In this document: positions 15,364-59,339 of the stretch, one piece after another
Layout: each line of letters opens with the position of its first letter
How positions within the stretch are numbered: position 1 is the stretch's first letter
IMG/VR virus record: IMGVR_UViG_3300047558_000137
Coordinates: 186,001 to 250,000 of that record
DNA length: 64,000 bases
Direction: 5' to 3' (one strand)
The notes under the pieces: generated by a model
Told to the model about the DNA's origin: nothing
The model's database searches: none
The model's input: the letters and a program-made list of their open reading frames with translations, nothing else
Position numbers and translations under genes: made by a program

Positions 15364-15759
15364 TTAAGCCTCCACGGTGTAGGGTTTGTTCCAAGAACCA
15401 ATATTAACATCAACATACCAGCCCACATCAAAGTAGTCCGACTGTATGTCACTACGATCATGATTGCCTTGATTCATTGCTGTGAACAATTCAATCAGAA
15501 ACTCTTTTGCATCACCATCAAAGTGATTGCGATAGTGATAAGGATTAACATCAATGGCCTGCTTCTGTGCGGCCCAACCGTCGGGTTGATCAATAACACG
15601 AACATGGTTACCAATCAGATCCAAACGACCTGACTTGATGTTAACGCAAAGTGTCATATGATTGCGAACTGCAATAGTTGCCTTGATGCCGTATTTCTTG
15701 CAGGCTGCTTTGATAGCCGGGGCCAACTGTGCTTTGCGTTCTTGACTCATATATGCCAT
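15364..15759 (-). CDS. Conserved early phage protein (LPD29-like)
   Basis: DRSDIQSDYFDVGWY motif; CAGGAG RBS downstream of the early promoter. Confidence 0.65.
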   Translation of the reverse strand: MAYMSQERKAQLAPAIKAACKKYGIKATIAVRNHMTLCVNIKSGRLDLIGNHVRVIDQPDGWAAQKQAIDVNPYHYRNHFDGDAKEFLIELFTAMNQGNHDRSDIQSDYFDVGWYVDVNIGSWNKPYTVEA

Positions 15760-15760
15760 T

Positions 15761-15855
15761 TTCAACTCCTGGTTGTTTGTTGCTATGTCTAAATTATAGC
15801 ACCATTTTGGGCAGATTTATCCAAAAAGTGTTGTTTTGTTGCAAAAATACAACAA
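15761..15855 (-). promoter_or_regulatory. Early promoter/RBS unit (near-duplicate of 19321-19417)
   Basis: GCCCAAAATGGTGCTATAAT..GACATAGCAACAAACAACCAGGAGTT; palindrome TTGTTGCAAAAATACAACAA at 15836-15855. Confidence 0.75.
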
Positions 15856-15858
15856 AAA

Positions 15859-16023
15859 TCAATCAATTTGTACGTCAGCAATCTTCCCGTTACGGAAAAT
15901 GTAATACGAATTTACTAATCCGTAGCTAACCCAAATGCAGTTGTTACCCGCTTGCATACTGTAGTTTTCAATGCCACGTTTACGCAGATCTTCAATGACC
16001 AGCATCTGCTCAAACTCATTCAT
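15859..16023 (-). CDS. Small hypothetical protein (54 aa)
   Basis: Manual translation MNEFEQMLVIEDLRKRGIENYSMQAGNNCIWVSYGLVNSYYIFRNGKIADVQID. Confidence 0.6.
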   Translation of the reverse strand: MNEFEQMLVIEDLRKRGIENYSMQAGNNCIWVSYGLVNSYYIFRNGKIADVQID

Positions 16024-16222
16024 TTTTACCCCAAATAAATTCTTCTAAGTCGTAGAGGACTTCTGCTTTACTGTTTCCACTTTTAGAAACGATTGTCATA
16101 CATTCTTTGACGAGCAACTCGGCGAACTTTTCTTTGTCAAAGATCCAACCTTCACCGCTTGTTGATGTTGGCTCAATGTAAGTCGTAGCCTGTTCAGCAA
16201 GTTGTTTAATTCGTTCGTTCAT
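16016..16222 (-). CDS. MNERI-family small protein
   Basis: MNERIKQLAEQA..EKFAELLVKEC. Confidence 0.8.
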   Translation of the reverse strand: MNERIKQLAEQATTYIEPTSTSGEGWIFDKEKFAELLVKECMTIVSKSGNSKAEVLYDLEEFIWGKNE

Positions 16223-16419
16223 ACATATACTCCTGATTCGTATCCTTCTACGCCTTTGATGACTTCTTCAAGTGTGTAAGTATTACCAAACAACTCAATT
16301 TCTTCGGGCCAGTCGTCCATTAGCCCTTCTTGCAATCCGTATGATTGTAGTTTTCCGTTTGGCAAACGCTTACCAGCGAGGTCAAATCCTGCTAAAAACG
16401 GTTTTAATTCTTCGTTCAT
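16219..16419 (-). CDS. Hypothetical cargo protein
   Basis: ATGA-coupled within the array. Confidence 0.7.
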   Translation of the reverse strand: MNEELKPFLAGFDLAGKRLPNGKLQSYGLQEGLMDDWPEEIELFGNTYTLEEVIKGVEGYESGVYV

Positions 16420-16613
16420 TCTTCATCACTCCTTAACGGCACGGTATAACTGCTGGCACCATGAATCTTCATCATGTGTTGGGCCAAAAGCACAGCATTT
16501 TCTCGGTTTGTGGCAAACACAGGATAAAAACTAATACTGGCTTGATACTCACCATTGGGTTTTTCTCCCAACTGAGTGAAACTCAAATTCACCACAAACT
16601 CTTTGGCTTTCAT
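16416..16613 (-). CDS. Hypothetical cargo protein
   Basis: Starts at GGAGTTGAAGAATGA and ends in the variant GGAGTGATGAAGAATGA. Confidence 0.7.
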   Translation of the reverse strand: MKAKEFVVNLSFTQLGEKPNGEYQASISFYPVFATNRENAVLLAQHMMKIHGASSYTVPLRSDEE

Positions 16614-16624
16614 TCTTCAACTCC

Positions 16625-16900
16625 TTATTGAAATTGCCGACGGCTACGACCGATTTCATCACACTTGGCAACAAACTTTGGATTCAATTCAAATGGTTTA
16701 TTGATTGGATCGGTGTTCATCATACGCTTGAGTTCATCAGCATTAGCAAGAATCAACTCAGCGAACTTTTTAAGTTCATCTTCGATAAAATCTTCAGCCC
16801 AAAAGTATTCGTGACCGTTTTGGTAATTACCAACCGTGTAGATAGCACCATTGGTTTCAAACCCAGCCCGTAGAGCAAGTTCTTTTAATCGTTCATTCAT
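16625..16900 (-). CDS. MNERI-family small protein
   Basis: MNERLKELA..KKFAELIL. Confidence 0.8.
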   Translation of the reverse strand: MNERLKELALRAGFETNGAIYTVGNYQNGHEYFWAEDFIEDELKKFAELILANADELKRMMNTDPINKPFELNPKFVAKCDEIGRSRRQFQ

Positions 16901-17136
16901 TCTTCAACTCCAAAATGTTCTTTAATATTGTCTGAGCAGGCCTTAGTGACTATTGCTACCCTAATTGGATAGATTCCGAATCTTTCAACATCTTTGTGTT
17001 TATAACAAGCATCGGCACATTCCCGAACAATTAACTCAGCAAATTTTTCAACATCGCTGTCATCTGAAAAATGCCACTCTCCATTATCGTAACGGAATCC
17101 TGTCTGTTCAGCAAGTTGTTTAATTCGTTCGTTCAC
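16897..17136 (-). CDS. MNERI-family small protein
   Basis: MNERIKQLAEQ..EKFAELIVREC..KEHFGVEE (GTG start). Confidence 0.85.
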   Translation of the reverse strand: MNERIKQLAEQTGFRYDNGEWHFSDDSDVEKFAELIVRECADACYKHKDVERFGIYPIRVAIVTKACSDNIKEHFGVEE

Positions 17137-17357
17137 GGCACCCTCACAAAATCAACATTTTCAACTGCGTCAGTTTTGAACACTCTACCCAGGATGCGAC
17201 TACCAACCGTACCACTCTTACTCAAGTAGTAATCATTGTTTGGCATCAACGAACCGTAGATAGTGCCGCCCACTTTTACTCCACTACCAGGAATCTTTTT
17301 CAATAGCTTTGCTTTGAAAACAACAAGTAAATTAGGATTACTATTATGGATAATCAT
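17133..17357 (-). CDS. Hypothetical cargo protein
   Basis: Coupled between repeat blocks. Confidence 0.7.
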   Translation of the reverse strand: MIIHNSNPNLLVVFKAKLLKKIPGSGVKVGGTIYGSLMPNNDYYLSKSGTVGSRILGRVFKTDAVENVDFVRVP

Positions 17358-17578
17358 TCTTCAACTCCGAAATGTTCTTTGTATCGGTTTAGCATCCGTT
17401 CAAACGCATTGAACGCTAACTCTTGTCGATTCAATTCAATGCATTCCTTTACAATCAACTCGGCGTGCTTGACAGAAACAATGGCATAGTAAATGTCATT
17501 GTATCGGAGTGCTGGTGGCACTTTGCTATCAGCATATTCCAACGCTTGAGTGTATAGTTCTCCAATTCGTTCATTCAT
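17354..17578 (-). CDS. MNERI-family small protein
   Basis: MNERIGEL..KHAELIVKEC..KEHFGVEE. Confidence 0.85.
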   Translation of the reverse strand: MNERIGELYTQALEYADSKVPPALRYNDIYYAIVSVKHAELIVKECIELNRQELAFNAFERMLNRYKEHFGVEE

Positions 17579-17581
17579 TCT

Positions 17582-17803
17582 TCAACTCCGAAATGTTCTT
17601 GCCACATACGCTTGGGTTCGCTGATTATTGGTTGCTTTGCCATGAAACCATTCAGATTCTACCATTGCATCCAACACCATTCGTTCCATCAACTCTACAT
17701 ACTTTTCTGCGTATGCTTGACTATACGGCATTGCTGTAGTTTCGTTTTGCTTGACAGCATAGATACGAGCCTGTTGCTCAAGTTCTTGAATTCGTTCGTT
17801 CAT
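17582..17803 (-). CDS. MNERI-family small protein (3' block read in a shifted frame)
   Basis: MNERIQELEQQA..EKYVEL. Ends RTFRS over the DNA AGAACATTTCGGAGTTGA. Confidence 0.75.
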   Translation of the reverse strand: MNERIQELEQQARIYAVKQNETTAMPYSQAYAEKYVELMERMVLDAMVESEWFHGKATNNQRTQAYVARTFRS

Positions 17804-18108
17804 TTCATTGCCCCCATAATCAGGTTAGCAAACATTTGTTCTTGCTTGCTGATAGTTTCTTCAATGTCTGCATCAAGATCACGGAACTCAACATTAGAAC
17901 GGTTGCGTTGCAGAGTATAGCCGCGGCGTGCCATGAAGTGCAGGAACACATCAACAGTGTAGATCTGTGCAGTTATAAAATCAATCTGTGGCTCAGGCTT
18001 AACACGACTGTGGATTGTTTTAAATAGATCCTTGCAGTCGTGAAAGTCTTTCATGCACTCGGGCAGGTGGCGCTTTTCTTCTAACCAAGCTTCAAGATTC
18101 TTTGACAT
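17800..18108 (-). CDS. Conserved phage hypothetical protein
   Basis: HLPECMKDFHDCKDLFK..YTVDVFLHFMARRGYTLQR. Confidence 0.75.
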   Translation of the reverse strand: MSKNLEAWLEEKRHLPECMKDFHDCKDLFKTIHSRVKPEPQIDFITAQIYTVDVFLHFMARRGYTLQRNRSNVEFRDLDADIEETISKQEQMFANLIMGAMK

Positions 18109-18289
18109 CTGTGTCTCCTTGCGACATTACTTTTGAGTTGGGAATAGAAACCTTAAACCCTGCAGGATGTTCTGCAATGATATGCATACAACCATGAGCG
18201 TTTGTTTCGGGCAGAGTGTGACTAATATAAGTCAGCACCGTACCCGGTGTGATATCGTAGTGCTGTTCTATTACAACAAACTTTTTCAT
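18092..18289 (-). CDS. Hypothetical protein
   Basis: ORF with RBS in the operon. Confidence 0.65.
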   Translation of the reverse strand: MKKFVVIEQHYDITPGTVLTYISHTLPETNAHGCMHIIAEHPAGFKVSIPNSKVMSQGDTDVKES

Positions 18290-18291
18290 CT

Positions 18292-18555
18292 TTAATCCTT
18301 AAAACGCTCACGCATCACTTCCAACACGTACAACGCACTGTTGACTCGTTTGTTGACTTCTTCGGCAGAGAGACCATCATTGAATCCAGTTTGAGCGATG
18401 CGTGTGGCAGTTTGTTTAACTGTTTCAGTGAATTCAACGATCATCAACTCGGCAAAGTGATTTACCATTGCTGACAATTCTTCACTCATGCCAGCAATAC
18501 CTGTTGGGTTTTTGCTAACATACTCTTTAATATCTTCTGGTTTAATATAATTCAT
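18292..18555 (-). CDS. Divergent MNERI-related protein (start MNYIK)
   Basis: Carries HFAELMI over the block-B DNA at 18445. Confidence 0.6.
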   Translation of the reverse strand: MNYIKPEDIKEYVSKNPTGIAGMSEELSAMVNHFAELMIVEFTETVKQTATRIAQTGFNDGLSAEEVNKRVNSALYVLEVMRERFKD

Positions 18556-18677
18556 TTTGCAACTCCATTCAAATAGCGCCATCCGAGTCGTTGTCCCGAA
18601 TAATAAAACAATTTGCCATACCAGTTTTGAAACTGACCCATGGGCTGTGCCAAACGGGTTTTGTCATCGATGTACAT
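18552..18677 (-). CDS. Small hypothetical protein (41 aa)
   Basis: Manual translation MYIDDKTRLAQPMGQFQNWYGKLFYYSGQRLGWRYLNGVAK, ending in GGAGTTGCAAAATGA. Confidence 0.55.
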   Translation of the reverse strand: MYIDDKTRLAQPMGQFQNWYGKLFYYSGQRLGWRYLNGVAK

Positions 18678-18678
18678 G

Positions 18679-18882
18679 TTAGTCCTTTACTCGCTCAACT
18701 TGAGCATGTTCGATTATAACACGGTCACGGATTGCGCCATAAACTGTAATAGGCTGTGTCAACACAATGTGGTGATTAACACGACCACCATAGGCTACAC
18801 GGCTAAGTTCAACACGACCCGACACAGGAATTTCTTCCAGGTATGTGGCTTCAACATACATGCCTTCTAAGTTCCAGCTCAT
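18679..18882 (-). CDS. Hypothetical protein (start MSWNLEG)
   Basis: AAGGA RBS, ATGA overlap. Confidence 0.7.
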   Translation of the reverse strand: MSWNLEGMYVEATYLEEIPVSGRVELSRVAYGGRVNHHIVLTQPITVYGAIRDRVIIEHAQVERVKD

Positions 18883-19103
18883 TTTGTTCCTTTCAACAAC
18901 CAAGTAGTTAGAAATGGTGTGTCATCAATAATACAACATTCGTTCCCGGCTCGCATTTTGTCTTTAACTAACTGCCAACCCATGGCATTATTAAGAGACA
19001 CACGTTTACCATCTTTGGCAATTTGTTTGACACGGTAAACTCGTCCATTGTAAAAAACAACGTTTCCGATATTAATTTCACGACCAATTGCATCTTGTAT
19101 CAT
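18879..19103 (-). CDS. Hypothetical SH3-like protein
   Basis: DAIGREINIGNVV motif. Confidence 0.65.
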   Translation of the reverse strand: MIQDAIGREINIGNVVFYNGRVYRVKQIAKDGKRVSLNNAMGWQLVKDKMRAGNECCIIDDTPFLTTWLLKGTK

Positions 19104-19112
19104 ACCAACTCC

Positions 19113-19319
19113 TTAGGCAACAAAATCAAAATTATAACCGTAGGATCCATCTCGGCTAACTTGAACTTTGTTATTGTAGTCCTTGTTCAACTGTTTGAGA
19201 ATTTTGCGTGATTCGGCTTCGGTGCAGATAACTGACAGCGTACCAAAGAAGAATGTAGCAAGATCTTCTGACTTGACAATTTCTGCTACTTTGCTAAGAA
19301 CTTCTTTTTCGAATGACAT
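19113..19319 (-). CDS. Hypothetical early protein
   Basis: First gene after the early promoter unit. Confidence 0.7.
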   Translation of the reverse strand: MSFEKEVLSKVAEIVKSEDLATFFFGTLSVICTEAESRKILKQLNKDYNNKVQVSRDGSYGYNFDFVA

Positions 19320-19320
19320 T

Positions 19321-19417
19321 TATAACTCCTGGTTGTTTGTTGCTATGTCATTAGTATAACACCATTTTGGGCAAAAGACACCAAATTTCAATCTTTTTTG
19401 TTGTATTTTTACAACAA
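19321..19417 (-). promoter_or_regulatory. Early promoter/RBS unit
   Basis: GCCCAAAATGGTGTTATACT; palindrome TTGTTGTATTTTTACAACAA at 19398-19417. Confidence 0.75.
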
Positions 19418-45421: not shown

Positions 45422-45808
45422 TTAAGCAATCCAGCCCTGTCCGGATATATCATGATACCAAGTATAAAAGTTAGCAGGAATACTAAAAGTCCATGGATCC
45501 AATGTATCAATGTAACACTTTTTATTACTTGATAAGTGCTGATATTTTGGTAACACCTCTAGCCCATTCACTGTTAATCCAATATCTAATCCGCTTGTGC
45601 CTTCTTTAAACTCTATTAGATTAACATCCAGTTTAACAGGATCAAATAGATCTAATGTAAATGTAATTTTATCTACATTGATAATAAATCCGTTGAGCTT
45701 TACGAAACTATCCGTCTGGCCATAACGAGTTATTAATAGATCAACTACTAATTTTTGGTGTGTGTCAATAGCCGAGAGATCTGAGAAAGTCTTTATATCT
45801 TGGTACAT
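45422..45808 (-). CDS. Hypothetical protein
   Basis: Overlaps the end of the radical SAM gene. Confidence 0.6.
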   Translation of the reverse strand: MYQDIKTFSDLSAIDTHQKLVVDLLITRYGQTDSFVKLNGFIINVDKITFTLDLFDPVKLDVNLIEFKEGTSGLDIGLTVNGLEVLPKYQHLSSNKKCYIDTLDPWTFSIPANFYTWYHDISGQGWIA

Positions 45809-47063
45809 AATCTAAAATGGAATTCTTTCGTAGTGTTTCAAATCCCTTAAGGAATCTTATTAACTGACTTCTGTGTTGGTCTGCATCCTCGGGGACACTG
45901 TAGTTCTGCATAAAATTATAGTAGTCTATAATGGTGTCTGCAATTACCTGATTAATTCGGCTGTTATTGCGTAGGTTCAATTGTCCAGTGTGAACAAGTC
46001 CATGGCGTAGAATCACCGAAGCTATCTTATCGACAACTTCCTGTCTGATATCATCGGGCATAATCTCAATACGCAGGCAGGCTGGATCACTTAGTATATC
46101 GCAACTTTCAGCAATGACATTTTTCTCTATCATATATTCAAACAGTTGATCTAGTTCGTATGCTGTAAAAATATTAGGTGTAATACGGAGAGAAATGTAT
46201 AACCCACTTTGCTTTCGCAATTCAAGAAAGCTATCAATGTTGGCAAGTATGTCCCCAATCTTCCCGGGATACCTAACATAGTCATTTAAGTCTGTAACCG
46301 ATTCAATGCTAATGCCCATATGAAATTCTTTAAACTGTTTAATTAACTGTTCAACACGTTCGTTGTAAATTGTACCGTTGGTTGTTGTACCAACAATAAT
46401 TTCTTTGCTTAATCCTGCATCTATTAATGCCTGACATATATCATAGAAAGCTGAATCAAATAGCGTTTCGCCACCAAGGAAATGTATGTACTTAACTGGA
46501 ATTGTTTTTAGCTCTGAGACAAATTGATCCACTGCATCCCGAGTCCAACTGTGATATCGGTCGGGCTGTTTAAAAGTCTGGCTGTCAATTTGATGTAGCT
46601 TAACGTAGTCTTGTTCTAATCTACTGCTGGCGATGGGGTCACACATGATACAGGCGCTGTTACAAACATTGCCCAAATCAATTTGTAGATCAACTGGGTG
46701 CATGTCAGCTAAGCCACTATTATTTTGGCTGTGTTGAAAATGGCTGTAGTGCGGACTGCTTAGAGTCTGCAATTCAAATTGATCAGTTATTCCGCTTTTT
46801 AATAACTGTCTGCGGCGGCCGCTTAGTTTGCCAAATTGATCTTGGTAATAACAGTTTGCACAACCTGCGGGCTGTTGCCCTTCTAAAAATTGACTGCGTA
46901 GACTACGCATACGATCACTGTTATAAAACTCCATAACAGATGCGGTGCGTATATTCATAGGAGAACTGCCCCGATCTTTAAACCAGCGGCATTCTTGAAA
47001 GTCCCCGTTGTAGGTTAATCTAACGTGGAACCATGGACTAGAACAAAAAGTATTTTTTAACAT
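45765..47063 (-). CDS. Radical SAM enzyme with an N-terminal Twitch/SPASM-like Cys cluster
   Basis: FCSSPW..CANCY; GNVCNSACIMC; LGGET; TTNGT. Confidence 0.85.
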   Translation of the reverse strand: MLKNTFCSSPWFHVRLTYNGDFQECRWFKDRGSSPMNIRTASVMEFYNSDRMRSLRSQFLEGQQPAGCANCYYQDQFGKLSGRRRQLLKSGITDQFELQTLSSPHYSHFQHSQNNSGLADMHPVDLQIDLGNVCNSACIMCDPIASSRLEQDYVKLHQIDSQTFKQPDRYHSWTRDAVDQFVSELKTIPVKYIHFLGGETLFDSAFYDICQALIDAGLSKEIIVGTTTNGTIYNERVEQLIKQFKEFHMGISIESVTDLNDYVRYPGKIGDILANIDSFLELRKQSGLYISLRITPNIFTAYELDQLFEYMIEKNVIAESCDILSDPACLRIEIMPDDIRQEVVDKIASVILRHGLVHTGQLNLRNNSRINQVIADTIIDYYNFMQNYSVPEDADQHRSQLIRFLKGFETLRKNSILDYVPRYKDFLRSLGY

Positions 47064-48237: not shown

Positions 48238-48678
48238 TTAGGCTACGTTGAGGATACTGCTAACTTTGATGTTAAACACTTCGTTGCCGTCATCTGCTTT
48301 GAACTCGCTAGCAAGAGCGGCACGTTCGGCTTCTTCTTTGGTAATTTCTACACCATCACGTGTGTAGATAGTTTTAGGAATGAAGTTGTTACGGATGCGA
48401 GTGCAACGGAAGTAGAACTCACCTTTGTGTTCGATCACATAAGGAAACACATTCCAAGTGCCCCAAGGCAGGCCTGCATTTTCTGCTGGCAGTTCACCTG
48501 ATGCACGTTTTTCTTGCACGGCTTTGATGTTATCGTAGTCTACTCCAACACGAGCTTGGAATGTACTAGTCTTAGTAATTGCTGTTTCGTTCTTACGAAC
48601 TTTGAGTGGACGAGCTGTAGTGAAAGTTGCGATTTGACCTTTACGCTCGAGCAATTTGTTTACAAATGCGTTTGACAT
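48238..48678 (-). CDS. Hypothetical early protein (start MSNAF)
   Basis: CAGGAG RBS after the early promoter. Confidence 0.7.
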   Translation of the reverse strand: MSNAFVNKLLERKGQIATFTTARPLKVRKNETAITKTSTFQARVGVDYDNIKAVQEKRASGELPAENAGLPWGTWNVFPYVIEHKGEFYFRCTRIRNNFIPKTIYTRDGVEITKEEAERAALASEFKADDGNEVFNIKVSSILNVA

Positions 48679-48711
48679 TTTTGACTCCTGTTTACTGTTG
48701 AACATGTATTG

Positions 48712-48794
48712 ATTATACAACCATTTTGCCCAAAAGACGCCTTTTTGCAAAATATTTCTGTTGTATTTTTGCAACAACTAGTACTAGAGTATTA
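48712..48794 (-). promoter_or_regulatory. Early promoter unit with both palindromes
   Basis: GGCAAAATGGTTGTATAAT; TGTTGTATTTTTGCAACA at 48759-48776; TAGTACT-AG-AGTATTA at 48779-48794. Confidence 0.7.
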
Positions 48795-49735: not shown

Positions 49736-50019
49736 ACTGTATCTTTTCTACTCAATATATCCCACACCATGCCATGCCAAGGCTTAAATGCAACATCGAC
49801 TCGAGTTGGGTCGTGCATGGCCCAATCAAGTTCCCACCACTCCGAGTTTGTGTCTAGGTAGACGATGCGAACACGATTGCCGTAGACTGAACGATAATAA
49901 TTTACTACCGCTTCAGCATCATTTGTGATCGTCATGCCGCCATCAAAGGGTGACAGGTCACGCAAGAACACAATGTTGTTTTTTTCATCGCGTTCAATAA
50001 TACCACTTCTTGCTCTCAT
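49732..50019 (-). CDS. Conserved phage hypothetical protein
   Basis: TITNDAEAVV..RIVYLDTNSEWWEL. Confidence 0.7.
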   Translation of the reverse strand: MRARSGIIERDEKNNIVFLRDLSPFDGGMTITNDAEAVVNYYRSVYGNRVRIVYLDTNSEWWELDWAMHDPTRVDVAFKPWHGMVWDILSRKDTV

Positions 50020-50022
50020 GAT

Positions 50023-50310
50023 TTATCGCCATTCATTTGCACGGTCGATTTCTTCTTGCGTAAACTGACCACCTGAACGGTCAGGGTTCTGTGCCCAACT
50101 ATCTTGTGTGGCTTTTTCGCAACACACTTCCACATCCTGCAAGATACGCTTGAGTTCGTCAATGTTAACCGCAAGGAAAGAAACTGTAGCATACAATGCC
50201 GCATCCTCGGCCATAGTACCAAGACAAAGGACCTTTCGGTGTGCTTCCAACAATTTTTCCTTGCCGGCAATTGTGTTTTTCAGATTATCTCTTACTGTAT
50301 GGATGTTCAT
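50023..50310 (-). CDS. Hypothetical cargo protein
   Basis: Starts at a repeat; ends SW..NPDRSGGQFTQEEID. Confidence 0.7.
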   Translation of the reverse strand: MNIHTVRDNLKNTIAGKEKLLEAHRKVLCLGTMAEDAALYATVSFLAVNIDELKRILQDVEVCCEKATQDSWAQNPDRSGGQFTQEEIDRANEWR

Positions 50311-50480
50311 TCTTCAACTCCAATATAAACTGCACGGCGATTCTTGTCGCTGACTTCGCTAAACCACGCAACAAAATCATCGGCCCCTTGTTTAGTATCA
50401 AACTTTTCTTCGTGATGAACTTTGTATTCTTGAGAATCCCAACGCTTGTGAATTCTGACTTCAACGATATGTTGTTTCAT
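50307..50480 (-). CDS. Cargo small protein ending GVEE (57 aa)
   Basis: Manual translation MKQHIVEVRIHKRWDSQEYKVHHEEKFDTKQGADDFVAWFSEVSDKNRRAVYIGVEE. Confidence 0.75.
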   Translation of the reverse strand: MKQHIVEVRIHKRWDSQEYKVHHEEKFDTKQGADDFVAWFSEVSDKNRRAVYIGVEE

Positions 50481-50710
50481 TCTTCAACTCCGAAATGTGC
50501 TTTCAAATCATTAGCAATAGCAAATGCTATGATCCACTTTGTATCTTCGCCGCGTTCATATTTGTAATCACGCTCGATTTTGGCGGAACATTCCTTGACA
50601 ATCAACTCGGCGAATCTTTGGGTATATGCTTTGTGGAATTCATCGCCTCGGTGGTCAGCAACAACATCATCTTCGGCCTGTTCAGCAAGTTCTTTAATTC
50701 GTTCGTTCAT
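50477..50710 (-). CDS. MNERI-family small protein
   Basis: MNERIKELAEQA..RFAELIVKEC..HFGVEE. Confidence 0.85.
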   Translation of the reverse strand: MNERIKELAEQAEDDVVADHRGDEFHKAYTQRFAELIVKECSAKIERDYKYERGEDTKWIIAFAIANDLKAHFGVEE

Positions 50711-50895
50711 TCTTCAACTCCCAAGTGATTAACGATTGCCCGAGCATTATTGTAATCAACTACATCGCAACATTCCTTGATTATCAATTCAGCGAACTTT
50801 TCTGAATACGCAATCAGCCCTTGTTCGTGGGGCAAATCTTGGTTGCGGTATTGTGCCCTGGCTTGATTCATAAGTATTGCTATTCGTTCGTTCAT
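50707..50895 (-). CDS. MNERI-family small protein
   Basis: MNERI..EKFAELIIKEC..HLGVEE. Confidence 0.85.
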   Translation of the reverse strand: MNERIAILMNQARAQYRNQDLPHEQGLIAYSEKFAELIIKECCDVVDYNNARAIVNHLGVEE

Positions 50896-51089
50896 TTTTC
50901 ATCATCCTGCAGTTTGGTTGCCAGTGCTTGACGAATTTGGTCAAACATTGACGCATTATGATTTAAGGCACTGGCAAATTTGTCTTTGATTTCAGCATCA
51001 AATAACTCGGTAGGATTACCCGTCTTGTCTGCTGTAATACGCTGTTCGGCAAGTTTTGCCAGTTCGTTAAGTTTATCGTTTAATGTCAT
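50892..51089 (-). CDS. Hypothetical cargo protein
   Basis: Lies between block C and block A. Confidence 0.7.
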   Translation of the reverse strand: MTLNDKLNELAKLAEQRITADKTGNPTELFDAEIKDKFASALNHNASMFDQIRQALATKLQDDEK

Positions 51090-51313
51090 TCTTCAACTCC
51101 AAAATGTTGTTTAACTGCGTCAAGGGCAGAGGTCGGATTCATATGTCCACGCTGTGATTTTACAATCACCTTCCATGTTTCCATAGCAACCAACTCGGCG
51201 AACTTTACTCGCCACTCATCTTGCCATTGCGTAAGCAGTAGAATTCTTTCTGTGGGAAGTTCATCTGCCCATCGTTTAGCCTCTACCATCAGTTCTTTAA
51301 TTCGTTCGTTCAT
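51086..51313 (-). CDS. MNERI-family small protein
   Basis: MNERIKELM..KFAELV..HFGVEE. Confidence 0.85.
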   Translation of the reverse strand: MNERIKELMVEAKRWADELPTERILLLTQWQDEWRVKFAELVAMETWKVIVKSQRGHMNPTSALDAVKQHFGVEE

Positions 51314-51527
51314 AGTCCAACTCCACTTCTCGTTCAACATAGGTTTTTGTTGCCATCTTTAACACAACTGCGGCACTATGGCGCCACATATCTTCACGCA
51401 TACCCAGATAACTTAACCCAAGTGCCTTAAAAGCATTGTCAAGTCCATCGTAGTCAAGTGTTGGTGCCGCAAGATGAAACTCTTTGGCACGATGCTTAAA
51501 CTCTTCCCAGGAACACGCTAATGTCAT
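51297..51527 (-). CDS. Hypothetical cargo protein
   Basis: Ends inside block A in another frame (DYERTN*). Confidence 0.7.
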   Translation of the reverse strand: MTLACSWEEFKHRAKEFHLAAPTLDYDGLDNAFKALGLSYLGMREDMWRHSAAVVLKMATKTYVEREVELDYERTN

Positions 51528-51700
51528 TCTTCAACTCCAACGAGTTCTAAAGTCCATCCAACGGGAGGTTCTTCGTTTCGTTTTTCATATCTCTTATTCA
51601 TTGTGTCACACGCTTTTAGTCTCGCTTGTTCCTCATTGATAGCACGAACGGTGACGGTTGCCGTTTTCCAGTAAGCATATTTGAAGGTATATTTGTTCAT
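51524..51700 (-). CDS. Cargo small protein ending GVEE (58 aa)
   Basis: Manual translation MNKYTFKYAYWKTATVTVRAINEEQARLKACDTMNKRYEKRNEEPPVGWTLELVGVEE. Confidence 0.75.
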   Translation of the reverse strand: MNKYTFKYAYWKTATVTVRAINEEQARLKACDTMNKRYEKRNEEPPVGWTLELVGVEE

Positions 51701-51903
51701 TCTTCAACTCCGAAATGTTTTGCAATTCTTTCACCGGCATCGTCACTGTAGTTACGGTTGGTAAAGTTTGTACCCAATGTGGCACATTCCCGAACAATCA
51801 ACTCGGCGAACTTTTCTTTATTAAAAATCTTTTGCGGAGGTGCATAGTTGTATTCCGCAAGGTCGTAAGATTCTTCAATTAGTTCTTTAATTCGTTCGTT
51901 CAT
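51697..51903 (-). CDS. MNERI-family small protein
   Basis: MNERIKEL..EKFAELIVREC..HFGVEE. Confidence 0.85.
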   Translation of the reverse strand: MNERIKELIEESYDLAEYNYAPPQKIFNKEKFAELIVRECATLGTNFTNRNYSDDAGERIAKHFGVEE

Positions 51904-52109
51904 ACCAGTTCTCCTGTAGCATCGTTGACACAGCCTCGGTAGACTGCCTTGAAAAATGATTTTGTGGGTGGTCGTTTATTATCAAACCATTCAATGTAAG
52001 CAGATGCCTCTTCTTTGGTTGAGTATTTGGTTGCAAATGTAACATCGGTCAAGTTAATCTTACCGTTCTCTACGGGGTGGACTTGGACGATGTGAAAGTA
52101 TTTGTTCAT
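51900..52109 (-). CDS. Hypothetical cargo protein
   Basis: Resembles 50307-50480. Confidence 0.7.
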   Translation of the reverse strand: MNKYFHIVQVHPVENGKINLTDVTFATKYSTKEEASAYIEWFDNKRPPTKSFFKAVYRGCVNDATGELV

Positions 52110-52273
52110 TCTTCAACTCCTTGAACCATTAGGTCCATTTCTTTTGCCAAATCTTCCATTAGATGGCGACCTTGTAGTTTCGAACCAATAAAACGGTTGT
52201 CGTAGTAGTCACTGTTCTGGCGCTCACGCTCGTCTAAGTATTCTTCTAAAACTTCTGAAAATTTACGACTCAT
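52106..52273 (-). CDS. Cargo small protein ending GVEE (55 aa)
   Basis: Manual translation MSRKFSEVLEEYLDERERQNSDYYDNRFIGSKLQGRHLMEDLAKEMDLMVQGVEE. Confidence 0.75.
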   Translation of the reverse strand: MSRKFSEVLEEYLDERERQNSDYYDNRFIGSKLQGRHLMEDLAKEMDLMVQGVEE

Positions 52274-52515
52274 TCTTCAACTCCGAAATATGTTTTCGTA
52301 TTAAGACGAATCTTTTCAATCAGTTCAGCAGACTTCTTATCGTTGTTACCGATACAATCTAACTGTTGCAACAGTAGAATGTCATCAAACTTCTTCACAA
52401 TCAACTCGGCGAACTTTTCATCAAAATACGCTTGCCTCTGTACATCATTAAACCCAATTCTTTGATTTACGGTACACCGTGCCTGATTGGCAAGTTCCCT
52501 GATTCGTTTGTTCAT
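52270..52515 (-). CDS. MNERI-family small protein (start MNKRIRELA)
   Basis: MNKRIRELANQA..EKFAELIVK..YFGVEE. Confidence 0.85.
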   Translation of the reverse strand: MNKRIRELANQARCTVNQRIGFNDVQRQAYFDEKFAELIVKKFDDILLLQQLDCIGNNDKKSAELIEKIRLNTKTYFGVEE

Positions 52516-52617
52516 TTTAATCCTTAGTATAAAGCCAGCGGCGAAATCTTGTTGATAATGTGGTTGCAACATTTACTCCAATAATCACAACCACTAACAT
52601 AATTAAAATAGTTTCAA

Positions 52618-52803
52618 TCATTTTACTTCCTCAAGTACATAATAGTCAGCATCAAACACTTGCCTGAAACGACTTGCCAACATAATAGCGTGAGATTCGT
52701 TATCTGCTTTAATATCCATTGTAACACTAGCAGCCTCATTTGTATAAAGGCTATTGTCAAGGTTAGTAAAGAATAACTCTACTTTATACGCTGTCATTTG
52801 CAT
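52618..52803 (-). CDS. Hypothetical protein
   Basis: Start revised to MQMTAYK. Confidence 0.55.
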   Translation of the reverse strand: MQMTAYKVELFFTNLDNSLYTNEAASVTMDIKADNESHAIMLASRFRQVFDADYYVLEEVK

Positions 52804-53065
52804 CTTTAAGAGTGTGCCACACTTTAGGATCAGTACCAAGATACAATGCGTACATGCGATAGTTACGCCATTGTGCAATTTTGTTTACTGTTTGTTCGGC
52901 CCAACGGAAGAAGCTGTCCCTAAACCAAAATGGATTAAGTACAGCCAATACAATGGCCACAAAAACAAAAGGGATGATTGCGTAGGTAAACGCATAGCGA
53001 AAGACCATAGCGCGGTAGTAAAAGCCACCGTCTTTAGTCATAGTAATTTCTTTGGGCAAGGACAT
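52784..53065 (-). CDS. Small membrane protein
   Basis: One transmembrane helix; AGGAG RBS. Confidence 0.7.
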   Translation of the reverse strand: MSLPKEITMTKDGGFYYRAMVFRYAFTYAIIPFVFVAIVLAVLNPFWFRDSFFRWAEQTVNKIAQWRNYRMYALYLGTDPKVWHTLKDANDSV

Positions 53066-54648: not shown

Positions 54649-56505
54649 TTACTTATTCTGGGATAAGTAGGTGCTTAATGGTATATTTTGCGCCTTTGCT
54701 TGGAAGATTGCATTGGCCGGTTGTGGATCATTGTTGGCTATAATTCCAACTGACATTAGCAATTCTGTGTTGAGTTTCTCTGCCACCGCAGCTCTAATTG
54801 TGTCGCCATAGCTGTCATTGGTTATTAGATTTGCAAAAAATTGTTTAGAATAAAACTGACTATCGTCTGATACTGCCGAGACGATACCTTGTGCAAATGA
54901 TTTTGTATAAGAGCTATCCGTAGTCATAAACTTAACTGAGTGAGCAGACAAATTACTAACTTCAGTGGACAACTTGTTTAACATTATGTAATATAGATCT
55001 TGTGCCAATATTCTTTGCGGAGTCGTAGATGAATCGTCTAATAAAGACACTAGGGAAGATACCGCAGAATTTATAGCAGAGAACGAAGGGATGTATTCTG
55101 GTACTTCTGGGACCGGTGGATCAACACTACCGGGCGAATATGGGACATAACTGGCTAGCCAAGAAAGAACAGCTGACTTCAATGTTGTTAGTGAAGCGGC
55201 CACAGTTGCCCCAAAAGTGTCAGATACTTTATTAGTTTGTTTATATGATTCAGTATAACCTGAGCCTGTGGTTGCCCCTAAGAAGTCACTTAGTACCAGA
55301 TTGTTCATTGGTCCTGTGCCAGTCCCCAATGCTGTTATAGACGACACAGTTGACGATGATAATATAGAGTCGGTTGATTTTGTTGTAGTATGAGATAGGT
55401 CAGGAACTACAATTTTGTTCATAAACGTGGCGATCTCAGCCCATGATGTAAAATTAGCATGACCTATTTTACTCTGAATAAATCTTCCAAACTCTTTAAA
55501 AGATTTTACATTAACTGTTGCCCATTGATCAATTAAATTAGGAGGCACAACCTTGTAAAAATCCAAGAAATCGTCTAGGCTAGTTATCTTATTAACAGTA
55601 GAAGCAGAAAAGCCAGTAGTCGATATCATTGTCGACAAATCAGATCCTTGCACTTGCTTGTAAATGTTCCTAATTACATCTACACTGCCGCCAGTAACAA
55701 TTGTAGTTGTTACAGTCTGTTTAATCGAAGATAATGGAATTTCGCCGTACGGCGATGTTGTTAGCTCTGTGCTTAGATCTTCAGTTGTAGTTGTTGATGA
55801 ACTAGGAATGTGAGTTATATCTGTTACATCAAGACCTGTGGCTGCTAGATTAACAGTTAGATTCCCGTACTTACCAAGACCCTGGTTTAATAAATTTTGT
55901 CCAAATACATAAGGATCATCTAATAGGTTTAGATTTGTAATATCATACATGGTTCCCCACGTAGATACTGTACTTGCAATTAGACTTCCGTAACTGCTTA
56001 ATCCGTGCGTTGCTAAATCATTTAAACCAGTGTGGCCCACACCCGTGTCAGCATAGGTTTGATTTTTAAGAATCTGTACAGATGCTACGGGGTCAAAGGT
56101 ACTGCTTATTTCTCCAAAGACTTGTGTATATACATTGGCAAATCCTGCCATACCATAACTAAAAGGTATGTTAATTTGTGTAGAAACAGTATTACTAACG
56201 CTAGCCACATTAGAGTTGCCATGATAAGATACTGTTCCACTAGATACTGGAGTTATATTACTTGGGTAAATGTCTAATAGATAATGACCATCGGTAATTG
56301 CCATTAACTTACTCGACACCGAATTATATAACAATTCCTGTGCATGACTAGGTGCATCACCAATTAAAGAAAATATATTTGCTGTTAGGACGTAAGTTGA
56401 CGTAGAGTGGAACTTGGTTATTTCTGATGTAACTGTAGTGTTTGCGGCTAACCCATGGCCAGTTAATACCGTGCTAATTGCATTTAATTCAATTGCACTT
56501 GCCAT
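54649..56505 (-). CDS. Putative virion structural protein
   Basis: 618 aa Ser/Thr-rich protein next to the PAAR gene. Confidence 0.6.
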   Translation of the reverse strand: MASAIELNAISTVLTGHGLAANTTVTSEITKFHSTSTYVLTANIFSLIGDAPSHAQELLYNSVSSKLMAITDGHYLLDIYPSNITPVSSGTVSYHGNSNVASVSNTVSTQINIPFSYGMAGFANVYTQVFGEISSTFDPVASVQILKNQTYADTGVGHTGLNDLATHGLSSYGSLIASTVSTWGTMYDITNLNLLDDPYVFGQNLLNQGLGKYGNLTVNLAATGLDVTDITHIPSSSTTTTEDLSTELTTSPYGEIPLSSIKQTVTTTIVTGGSVDVIRNIYKQVQGSDLSTMISTTGFSASTVNKITSLDDFLDFYKVVPPNLIDQWATVNVKSFKEFGRFIQSKIGHANFTSWAEIATFMNKIVVPDLSHTTTKSTDSILSSSTVSSITALGTGTGPMNNLVLSDFLGATTGSGYTESYKQTNKVSDTFGATVAASLTTLKSAVLSWLASYVPYSPGSVDPPVPEVPEYIPSFSAINSAVSSLVSLLDDSSTTPQRILAQDLYYIMLNKLSTEVSNLSAHSVKFMTTDSSYTKSFAQGIVSAVSDDSQFYSKQFFANLITNDSYGDTIRAAVAEKLNTELLMSVGIIANNDPQPANAIFQAKAQNIPLSTYLSQNK

Positions 56506-58546: not shown

Positions 58547-59339
58547 TTTTTGTTCCTTGTATATACTCATACAATTCATCTGCAATAATTTGATGTGCTG
58601 CTACTGTAGGATGGGCAGTTGCACAATCTAACATTGATTGATTTTGTAATTCCCTAATAGATTTATTTGAAAACTGTCGTGTCTGGTCAAGTAAGTTTAA
58701 CCAAGGCACCGACGACTGGCTTACGTCGATATTATTACGTCTACATAAAAGACTTAATAAGTCATTGTTCTTTTCTCTAACACGATAAAAATGTTGGTCA
58801 GGTATGTTAACAGATAAATCAAGATCTTGAAAACTGTTGGCAAACAAATGTTCTATATTATTGTTAGATAGATAGTTACTTATCAACAAAACATCTTGAC
58901 CTAGTTTTTGCAATTCGTATTCTTCATTGAAGTATCTTGAAAAGTAATCTTTAACTTCTGCTTCAAGGCCTTGATTAGTATAGTAGCCACCAGCTAAACA
59001 CGATTCTACCTGTCTAGTGGTGCTACTGTACATTTCCCATCTATAAAGGCTAGTTATTCCCCACAAGACGAATATTCTGCTGTATTTTGAACGACTTTGG
59101 TCTATAAAATCGACCAATCTACGTGCCTGTGTCTTATTGTTAGAACCGTGCTGTGCCACAAATACTAGATCGTCTAGTTGTAGGCGTCTACGTAGAATGC
59201 CAGCAAAACTATGCTGGTCTACGTAGGAAGGATCTTCGACGTGACCATAGTCAACGTTGGTAGCGGCTGGATCAGTATCAATTGATTTTGCCGCTACCCA
59301 TGAACATCCTGCTGCAACTAGTACACTAGGCTTTGTCAT
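58533..59339 (-). CDS. SGNH-like hypothetical protein inserted between nrdA and nrdB
   Basis: AGCSW..GSNN..HPTVAAHQIIADEL. Confidence 0.6.
   Translation of the reverse strand: MTKPSVLVAAGCSWVAAKSIDTDPAATNVDYGHVEDPSYVDQHSFAGILRRRLQLDDLVFVAQHGSNNKTQARRLVDFIDQSRSKYSRIFVLWGITSLYRWEMYSSTTRQVESCLAGGYYTNQGLEAEVKDYFSRYFNEEYELQKLGQDVLLISNYLSNNNIEHLFANSFQDLDLSVNIPDQHFYRVREKNNDLLSLLCRRNNIDVSQSSVPWLNLLDQTRQFSNKSIRELQNQSMLDCATAHPTVAAHQIIADELYEYIQGTKNERI

What the first reader, a model, noticed from the sequence alone, without database searches (positions are those of the whole stretch)
16610..17603. Block C is kept even when it is not read as GVEE, which points to nucleotide-level selection
Seen: at 16610-16624 the 15-mer lies after the TAA of ORF 16625-16900, so it does not encode GVEE. 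In ORF 17582-17803 the extended block AGAACATTTCGGAGTTGAAGAATGA is read in a shifted frame (RTFRS*) but is intact. Three non-MNERI cargo proteins (50307, 51524, 52106) also end in GVEE. Inference: the element is a DNA or RNA signal (recombination site and/or a fixed translational-coupling module), and GVEE is a by-product.
Basis: partly seen in the sequence, partly recalled or inferred. Interest (0 to 1): 0.68.

Follow-up and report, generated by a model that had tools for sequence, protein, structure and literature searches.

The report
Shared start-stop junction shuffles phage gene cassettes
A 15-base ribosome-binding, start and stop junction is copied letter for letter between small genes of a giant freshwater phage and of more than a hundred unrelated phages, and it marks the exact points where gene cassettes have been swapped, so the peptide tail it spells (GVEE) looks like a side effect.

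Summary
GGAGTTGAAGAATGA occurs 12 times exactly in the window and 17 times in the 374-kb phage genome. All copies are on the minus strand, in three arrays of small overlapping genes. In all 17 copies the ATG inside the block starts the next ORF. The upstream ORF reads it as GVEE-stop in 14, in a shifted frame (..RS-stop) in 2, and not at all (after TAA) in 1.

The block is GGAG (Shine-Dalgarno), a 7-nt spacer, then ATG overlapping TGA. The same 15-mer sits in 131 of 146 unrelated viral contig clusters. In a sample found by protein pattern, not by the block, 96 of 102 GVEE tails use identical codons, while the adjacent Phe codon varies freely. One-letter variants show no enrichment for synonymous changes (6 versus 27).

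Sequence similarity between copies switches on or off exactly at the block edges, and the neighbours on the two sides assort independently. Two other blocks of the MNERI family have frozen codons too, and half-genes are shuffled at the mid-gene block.

Best reading: a plug-and-play translation junction that also serves as the homology patch for cassette exchange. It works like the PeSL elements of T4-type phages but is not one. Neither translation nor recombination has been tested experimentally. All comparative evidence comes from metagenome assemblies.

The parts
16610..16624 (-). exact 15-mer, untranslated by the upstream ORF (follows its TAA); its ATG starts ORF 16416-16613
16897..16911 (-). 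exact 15-mer read as GVEE-stop by family ORF 16897-17136; starts family ORF 16625-16900
17354..17368 (-). exact 15-mer read as GVEE-stop by family ORF 17354-17578; starts cargo ORF 17133-17357
17575..17599 (-). extended block (25 nt) read one frame off as RTFRS-stop by family ORF 17582-17803; its ATG starts family ORF 17354-17578
50307..50321 (-). exact 15-mer ending cargo ORF 50307-50480 (..IGVEE) and starting cargo ORF 50023-50310
50477..50491 (-). exact 15-mer ending family ORF 50477-50710 and starting cargo ORF 50307-50480
50707..50721 (-). exact 15-mer ending family ORF 50707-50895 (..HLGVEE) and starting family ORF 50477-50710. With block A downstream this is the longest conserved junction and the place most often hit by contigs of other metagenomes
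51086..51100 (-). exact 15-mer ending family ORF 51086-51313 and starting cargo ORF 50892-51089
51524..51538 (-). exact 15-mer ending cargo ORF 51524-51700 (..VGVEE) and starting cargo ORF 51297-51527
51697..51711 (-). exact 15-mer ending family ORF 51697-51903 and starting cargo ORF 51524-51700
52106..52120 (-). exact 15-mer ending cargo ORF 52106-52273 (..QGVEE) and starting cargo ORF 51900-52109
52270..52284 (-). exact 15-mer ending family ORF 52270-52518 (..YFGVEE) and starting cargo ORF 52106-52273
16416..16430 (-). degenerate copy (3 mismatches, read SDEE-stop): the 3' half with ATGA is kept and the SD is moved one base upstream
51310..51324 (-). degenerate copy (3 mismatches) read in the third frame by ORF 51297-51527, which stops at the TAA inside block A of the next gene
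18552..18566 (-). degenerate copy (2 mismatches) in front of ORF 18292-18555
15859..19319 (-). array 2: a run of about 17 small, mostly ATGA-overlapping ORFs, five of them MNERI-family members (16016-16222, 16625-16900, 16897-17136, 17354-17578, 17582-17803)
50023..52572 (-). array 3: five family members (50477-50710, 50707-50895, 51086-51313, 51697-51903, 52270-52518) interleaved with unrelated cargo ORFs
19313..19373 (-). sigma70-like promoter repeat with a leader ending in GGAGTT..ATG, upstream of array 2
15753..15813 (-). second copy of the promoter repeat, just downstream of array 2; its leader ends GGAGTTGAAAATG, one base short of the block

Best explanation
Block C is a self-contained translation junction. 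It consists of a Shine-Dalgarno GGAG, a fixed 7-nt purine-rich spacer, and an ATG whose last two letters, with the next A, form a TGA. The block starts whatever gene lies downstream. It also terminates the upstream gene within a few bases of that start, in two of the three frames (TGA at +5 and at +12). The third frame is closed by a TAA in block A when a family gene follows. Because the same 15 nt flank many otherwise unrelated small early genes, the block is also the homology patch at which cassettes are exchanged, deleted and inserted by homologous recombination, within a genome and between co-infecting phages. The phage encodes a RecA/UvsX-like protein. Every exchange at the block regenerates intact expression signals on both sides, so cassettes carrying the consensus block spread, and that would keep it identical. 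GVEE is simply what the block spells when the upstream ORF enters it in frame 0. Shown here: the sequence anatomy, the frames, the frozen codons, the lack of synonymous enrichment, and the homology breakpoints at the block edges. Inferred: that ribosomes re-initiate there, and that the exchanges happen by homologous recombination at the block.
For: The ATG of the block starts the downstream ORF in 17 of 17 own copies and opens an ORF of 30 aa or more in 244 of 253 distinct copies in relatives. Frames in the own genome are 14 GVEE-stop, 2 shifted and 1 after a stop. In relatives they are 224 in frame, about 15 shifted and 2 after a stop. Codons are frozen next to a freely varying Phe codon. In block C, third codon positions are as conserved as first and second positions. 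One-mismatch variants are 6 synonymous to 27 non-synonymous. The promoter-proximal leaders use nearly the same SD-spacer-ATG without any upstream ORF. Among 276 contexts of the exact block, 23 pairs are alike upstream only, 31 downstream only and 1 on both sides. Identity drops from about 0.9 to 0.28 at +15, or rises from about 0.3 to 1.0 at position 0. Pairs with similar V2 segments have unrelated downstream genes in 40 of 52 cases. In the own genome, paralogues share only islands of 18-52 nt at the blocks. Single cassettes of the window occur at 90-99% identity in other freshwater metagenomes, end at block edges and run on into unlike sequence. The exact block is present in 131 of 146 unrelated contig clusters with GC 0.33-0.52. 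A RecA-like gene is present.
Against: Other genes of this genome use heterogeneous SD and spacer sequences. Translation alone therefore does not require this exact spacer, and the reason for letter-perfect identity remains an inference. Fifteen bases is a short substrate for RecA-type recombination. Random pairs of family junctions share a median exact run of only 9 nt, and 15 nt or more in 22% of pairs. All comparative evidence is from metagenome assemblies; chimeric joins at repeats cannot be fully excluded, although 15 nt is below assembler k-mer sizes. No expression data were available: no run on record as RNA holds the stretch.
Confidence: 0.68

Rival explanations
1. A translation signal only. 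The 15-mer is an optimised ribosome-binding, re-initiation module kept by selection on expression. Homology breaks at its edges merely because it is the only thing unrelated cassettes have in common, not because exchanges happen there.
For: SD, 7-nt spacing, and the ATG used in 17 of 17 and 244 of 253 copies. A near-identical leader occurs at promoter-proximal genes. GGAGTTGA matches 7 of 8 bases of the extended SD consensus (my own knowledge of the 16S 3' end, not tested for the unknown host).
Against: The genome's other starts work with varied SD and spacers. Local RNA folding does not differ from other starts. This rival does not explain why blocks A and B, which have no RBS role, are frozen too. 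It also does not explain why both flanks assort independently.
Confidence: 0.15
2. Target of a sequence-specific factor. A dedicated nuclease or recombinase (integron-like or homing-like) recognises the block and moves cassettes.
For: Sharp edges and letter-perfect identity across 131 unrelated contig clusters. Cassettes are bounded by direct copies.
Against: No inverted repeat or hairpin (0 pairs). No tyrosine recombinase and no reverse transcriptase in the genome. Breakpoints also fall at blocks A and B, which have different sequences. The shared heptamer is not enriched or skewed elsewhere in the genome.
Confidence: 0.07
3. Binding or cleavage site of a common post-transcriptional regulator (of the RegA or RegB type) that switches the whole set of early genes together.
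For: Identity extends beyond the SD into the spacer. The genes lie in promoter-driven arrays of small genes typical of early regions. T4 RegB cleaves at GGAG (my own knowledge).
Against: No RegA or RegB family match in the genome, although the control genomes were silent too, so this is weak evidence. It does not explain the homology breakpoints or the frozen blocks A and B.
Confidence: 0.05
4. Protein-level selection. GVEE is a functional C-terminal tail, and the identical codons reflect ancestry or codon bias.
For: The preceding His-Phe is conserved as amino acids with synonymous variation. The AlphaFold model places FGVEE as a tail after helix 3.
Against: Codons are far beyond usage expectation. 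There is no synonymous enrichment among variants. Intact copies exist that are untranslated or read in another frame, some persisting in diverged lineages. Unrelated cargo proteins carry the tail, with homology starting exactly at GGAG.
Confidence: 0.03

Closest known systems
PeSL (promoter-early stem-loop) cassettes of T4-type phages (Arbiol et al. 2010, PMC2839356; Comeau et al. 2014, PMC4122927)
   Same: Short repeated regulatory sequences flank small, mostly unknown genes in plastic regions. They include the upstream stop, the SD and the start of the next gene. They serve as points of exchange between otherwise unrelated sequences, so each exchange keeps the cassette expressible.
   Different: A PeSL is an intergenic promoter plus terminator stem-loop. 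Block C has no promoter and no stem-loop. It is only 15 nt, lies inside overlapping coding sequence as a translational rather than transcriptional junction, and is shared letter for letter among more than 100 unrelated phage contig clusters rather than within one phage pair. Mini-circles were shown for PeSLs; nothing comparable has been tested here.
ATGA start-stop overlaps (termination-reinitiation coupling) in bacterial and phage operons
   Same: SD inside the end of the upstream gene, with the stop overlapping the next start; most junctions in these arrays are ATGA overlaps.
   Different: Ordinary coupled junctions differ from gene to gene. Here one exact version, spacer included, is reused 17 times in one genome and across many phages, also where the upstream ORF does not read it in frame.
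Conserved-motif recombination in T-even hypervariable loci (glycine-rich motifs of the gp38 adhesin; the capsid-targeting sequence of the internal-protein locus).
   Same: Short conserved stretches inside or at the ends of genes bracket hypervariable segments and are proposed crossover points. This parallels blocks A, B and C bracketing V1 and V2.
   Different: A different protein family and different phages. Here the joint at the gene end is at the same time the RBS and start of the next gene.
Integron gene cassettes (attC sites)
   Same: Arrays of promoterless, same-orientation small cassettes bounded by a repeated site.
   Different: No attC-like hairpin, no integrase, and the repeat is a translation signal.

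Membership tests
PeSL | sigma70-like early promoter inside the repeat | tested here: not met
   The 15-mer and its conserved flanks contain no -35/-10 pair. The promoter-like repeats lie elsewhere (window 19313-19373 and 15753-15813).
PeSL | stable stem-loop (terminator or attenuator) | tested here: not met
   RNAalifold on 12 copies with 40-nt flanks predicted 0 pairs. Local folding energy does not differ from other starts.
PeSL | homology between otherwise unrelated sequences ends at the repeat (point of exchange) | tested here: met
   The identity profile switches at the block edges: 23 pairs alike upstream only, 31 downstream only, 1 alike on both sides.
PeSL | circular excision products between neighbouring repeats | not testable with these tools
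   Only assembled contigs were on hand, no raw reads.
Coupled start-stop junction (SD + ATGA) | SD-like sequence 5-9 nt upstream of a start codon | tested here: met
   GGAG followed by 7 nt and then ATG in every copy.
Coupled start-stop junction (SD + ATGA) | upstream stop overlaps or abuts the downstream start | tested here: met
   Stop at +12 (ATGA) in 14 copies, at +5 in 2 and at -3 in 1 of the 17 own copies.
Coupled start-stop junction (SD + ATGA) | downstream translation depends on upstream translation | not testable with these tools
   Needs reporter assays or ribosome profiling.
Integron attC | imperfect inverted repeats folding into a hairpin | tested here: not met
Integron attC | tyrosine recombinase (IntI) in the element | tested here: not met
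   No PF00589 match in the 374-kb genome; the control genomes all matched.
Diversity-generating retroelement | reverse transcriptase with template/variable repeat pair | tested here: not met
   No PF00078 match. The variable parts differ by unrelated sequence and indels, not by point changes at adenines.
Any described protein family for the MNERI proteins | match to a Pfam or PHROG model, a cultured-phage gene or a solved fold | tested here: not met
   Pfam and PHROGs gave no meaningful match. tblastn against 50,697 phage records gave none. The Atlas neighbours are viral hypothetical clusters only. The 3-helix model (pLDDT 86) has no PDB match with E <= 0.001.

The most novel reading that the evidence does not exclude
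The block is the universal connector of a cassette pool shared by many freshwater phages. Any small gene that starts after ATGA and ends in the 15-mer can be dropped between two others, in any of more than 100 unrelated phage lineages, and be expressed at once. It would be an integrase-free counterpart of an integron. The MNERI proteins would in addition be diversified combinatorially by swapping half-genes at an internal frozen block (V1 and V2 pairs: 121 discordant against 3 concordant), as expected for proteins in an arms race with host defences. A sequence-specific factor acting on the shared GAGTTGA core of blocks B and C is not excluded.
Probability: 0.35. Interest if true: 0.8.

Novelty: new variant of a known kind. 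Interest (0 to 1): 0.66.

Why it matters
If this reading is right, it gives a concrete, sequence-defined mechanism for how phages trade small accessory genes. The connector is a 15-nt translational junction that keeps every recombinant expressible, and it is shared far beyond one phage lineage. It also identifies a large, undescribed family of three-helix phage proteins built from two independently shuffled halves. That makes the long-standing 'linker sequence' idea of modular phage evolution testable on a defined motif. The exact motif is also a practical handle for finding accessory-gene arrays in uncultured phage genomes.

Tried and rejected
- Conserved RNA structure around the block: none found. 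Folding energy and accessibility are the same as at other gene starts.
- Generic RBS consensus of the genome as the sole cause: rejected. Other starts use AAGGAG-like SDs with varied following bases and spacers of 5-8 nt.
- Nested ORF from the out-of-frame ATG in block B: median length 5 codons, rejected.
- Chi-like genome-wide signal: the heptamer GAGTTGA is at expected frequency and unskewed outside the arrays.
- DGR: no reverse transcriptase.
- Integron-like system: no tyrosine recombinase.
- RegA/RegB-type regulator: no match, but the control genomes were silent too, so this is weak.
- Naming the protein family: Pfam, PHROGs, INPHARED (DNA near and distant, tblastn, and the 61-nt junction), the Atlas and a PDB fold search gave nothing informative. 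The only plausible database hit was one uncultured Caudoviricetes record from a freshwater spring (H14), which was not followed up.
- Literature search for the peptide and DNA motifs: no relevant paper.
- Expression: no run on record as RNA holds the stretch.
- Recombinant junctions in reads: only assembled contigs were available, so rare variants and circles cannot be seen.

Full report
**What is there.** The window is bases 186001-250000 of a 374,314-bp IMG/VR virus record (GC 0.41). It carries phage structural and nucleotide-metabolism genes and is only remotely related to cultured phages. The 15-mer GGAGTTGAAGAATGA occurs 12 times exactly in the window, against 0.14 matches expected with up to 2 mismatches. 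It occurs 17 times in the genome, always on the minus strand, in three arrays of small, mostly ATGA-overlapping ORFs. The copy at 16610-16624 follows a TAA. The extended copy at 17575-17599 is read as RTFRS-stop. Three unrelated ORFs (50307-50480, 51524-51700, 52106-52273) end in GVEE.

**What the copies share.** In all 17 copies the ATG inside the block starts the downstream ORF, and the downstream N-termini are diverse. The upstream ORF reads the block as GVEE-stop in 14 copies, one frame off (..RS-stop, TGA inside GTTGAA) in 2, and not at all in 1. An alignment of the 12 window copies with 40-nt flanks has exactly 15 invariant columns with sharp edges. The anatomy is GGAG, seven bases, then ATG overlapping TGA: a Shine-Dalgarno, start and stop junction. 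Two sigma70-like promoter repeats bracket array 2. Their leaders end in nearly the same SD-spacer-ATG without any upstream ORF.

**The gene family.** Seventeen ORFs of the genome belong to one family of 62-100 aa. It has three conserved blocks:
- A: MNERIKELAEQA at the start.
- B: KFAELIVKEC in the middle.
- C: HFGVEE at the end.

It matches no Pfam or PHROG model and no cultured-phage record. Its Atlas neighbours are viral hypothetical clusters. With an alignment of 67 sequences it folds as a confident three-helix protein (pLDDT 86) with FGVEE as a tail, and no solved fold matches.

**Relatives.** A scan for the 18-mer TTYGGAGTTGAAGAATGA found more than 120 contigs. The 194 loci fetched fall into 146 clusters with no megablast similarity to each other, with GC from 0.33 to 0.52. 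The exact 15-mer is present in 131 of these clusters. It is present in 51 of the 68 clusters found by protein pattern alone.

**Nucleotide or protein selection.** These tests used the pattern-unbiased sample of 282 family ORFs.
- 102 ORFs end in GVEE and 96 of them use the exact 15-mer.
- The codons are GGA 101/102, GTT 98/102, GAA 102/102 twice, and TGA 101/102. Usage of GGA, GTT and GAA elsewhere in the same genes is 0.26, 0.40 and 0.76.
- The Phe codon immediately upstream is TTC/TTT at 58:41, so synonymous sites have had time to randomise.
- In block C, third codon positions are as conserved as first and second positions.
- Among in-frame ends with one mismatch, 6 changes are synonymous and 27 are not, where 9:25 are possible. 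There is no sign of selection on the amino acids GVEE.
- Of 253 distinct exact copies in relatives, 224 are in frame, about 15 are shifted and 2 follow a stop. The ATG opens an ORF of 30 aa or more in 244.
- Shifted copies recur in diverged V2 lineages (L062/L103, L085/L144, L121/L042). They are exact as often as in-frame ones: 3 of 5 against 96 of 175.
- 39 of the 253 copies follow a non-family ORF.

**Block C is not alone.** Blocks A and B have frozen codons too. Block B is AAG TTC GCC GAG TTG ATT in 89 of 155 cases, and these are mostly non-preferred codons. Variable columns follow codon usage. Block B has no RBS role and no nested ORF. This points to a cause common to all three blocks.

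**Recombination.** The segments between blocks assort independently.
- Pairs with V1 at least 75% identical and V2 unrelated: 67. The reverse: 54. Both alike: 3.
- One such mosaic pair lies in this genome: 182233-182343 against window 17354-17464, 91% identical, with unrelated V1 segments.
- Pairs with similar V2 have unrelated downstream genes in 40 of 52 cases. Pairs with similar V1 have unrelated upstream genes in 42 of 49.
- Among 276 contexts of the exact block, 23 pairs are alike only upstream, 31 only downstream and 1 on both sides. Mean identity steps from about 0.9 to 0.28 at +15, or from about 0.3 to 1.0 at position 0.
- Within the genome, paralogues share only islands of 18-52 nt at the blocks.
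- Contigs of three other freshwater or aquatic metagenomes, from other studies, hold single cassettes of window 49800-53000 at 90-99% identity.
- The genome encodes a RecA/UvsX-like protein.

**What it is not.** There is no conserved RNA structure and no unusual accessibility. There is no reverse transcriptase and no tyrosine recombinase. No RegA or RegB match was found, but the controls were silent, so that is weak. The heptamer GAGTTGA, shared by blocks B and C, is at expected frequency outside the arrays. Other genes use varied SD and spacer sequences, so translation as such does not demand this exact spacer.

**Mechanism proposed.** The block is a plug-and-play translation junction. It supplies SD and start to the next cassette, and it stops the previous one in two frames (+5 and +12). 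A TAA in block A closes the third frame at +25, as in ORF 51297-51527. Because it is the only sequence common to unrelated cassettes, exchanges at it move whole cassettes and leave both partners expressible. Cassettes that keep the consensus are the ones that spread, which would hold the letters fixed. The same logic at block B shuffles half-genes. The anatomy, frames, codon statistics and breakpoints are shown here. Re-initiation and recombination at the block are inferred.

**Comparison with known systems.** It works like the PeSL cassettes of T4-type phages, where repeated regulatory sequences including stop, SD and start serve as points of exchange (PMC2839356, PMC4122927). It fails the defining PeSL features of promoter and stem-loop. 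It resembles ordinary ATGA coupling, but one exact version is reused across genes and genomes. It resembles integron arrays in layout only. I file it as a new variant of a known kind.

**Caveats.**
- All relatives are metagenome assemblies. A 15-nt repeat is below assembler word sizes, which argues against chimeras, but block A+C junctions reach 30-50 nt.
- Copies within one contig are not independent.
- The contigs laid are assemblies and cannot show rare variants or circles.
- The host is unknown.
- Only genetic code 11 was used.

Noticed in passing
window 19300-19385 (-), 15753-15813 (-), 48673-48738 (-); also G000:C1:180775-180832 (-) and 55541-55602 (+): A repeated 60-85-nt element with TTGCCC, a 17-nt gap, TATAAT or TATACT, and a conserved leader ending in GGAGTT..ATG. 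It is probably the phage's sigma70-type promoter for operons of small genes. Two copies bracket array 2.
   Followed up: partly
blocks A and B of every family ORF, e.g. window 50590-50615 and 51787-51813: The mid-gene block B (KFAELI) keeps non-preferred codons (AAG TTC GCC GAG TTG ATT) in 75-93% of family ORFs from 68 unrelated contig clusters, while the next Val codon is free. Blocks B and C share GAGTTGA in different frames. This is only loosely explained by the recombination-joint idea.
   Followed up: partly
window 17354-17464 versus G000:C1:182233-182343: Two family genes share the second half (91% nucleotide identity) but have unrelated first halves: a mosaic with its crossover in block B inside one genome.
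   Followed up: yes
window 17133-17357 and G000:C1:181633-181857: A 74-aa cargo gene (MIIHNSNPNL..VENVDFVRVP) is present twice at 73% nucleotide identity, each time entered through block C, but with different upstream neighbours.
   Followed up: partly
window 51297-51527: This cargo ORF runs through a degenerate block in the third frame and stops at the TAA inside block A of the next gene (..DYERTN). Blocks C and A together carry stops in all three frames.
   Followed up: partly
window 52106-52273 and locus L154: The cargo protein ending ..MVQGVEE has a homologue on another viral contig that also ends in QGVEE followed by a family gene, so the tail travels with the cassette.
   Followed up: no
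G000:C1:319880-320632 (-), outside the window: RecA/UvsX-like gene (PF00154, E 6e-14), a candidate for the recombination inferred at the blocks.
   Followed up: no
window 45765-47063 (-) and 59336-61639 (-): A radical-SAM-domain protein and a class I ribonucleotide reductase large subunit lie between and beyond the arrays. Many large ORFs of the window have no PHROG match.
   Followed up: no
window 50656-50762 and 51726-51832: In three other freshwater or aquatic metagenomes, hundreds of contigs pile up on these two stretches (the block C + A junction and block B). The family is therefore abundant in such waters.
   Followed up: partly
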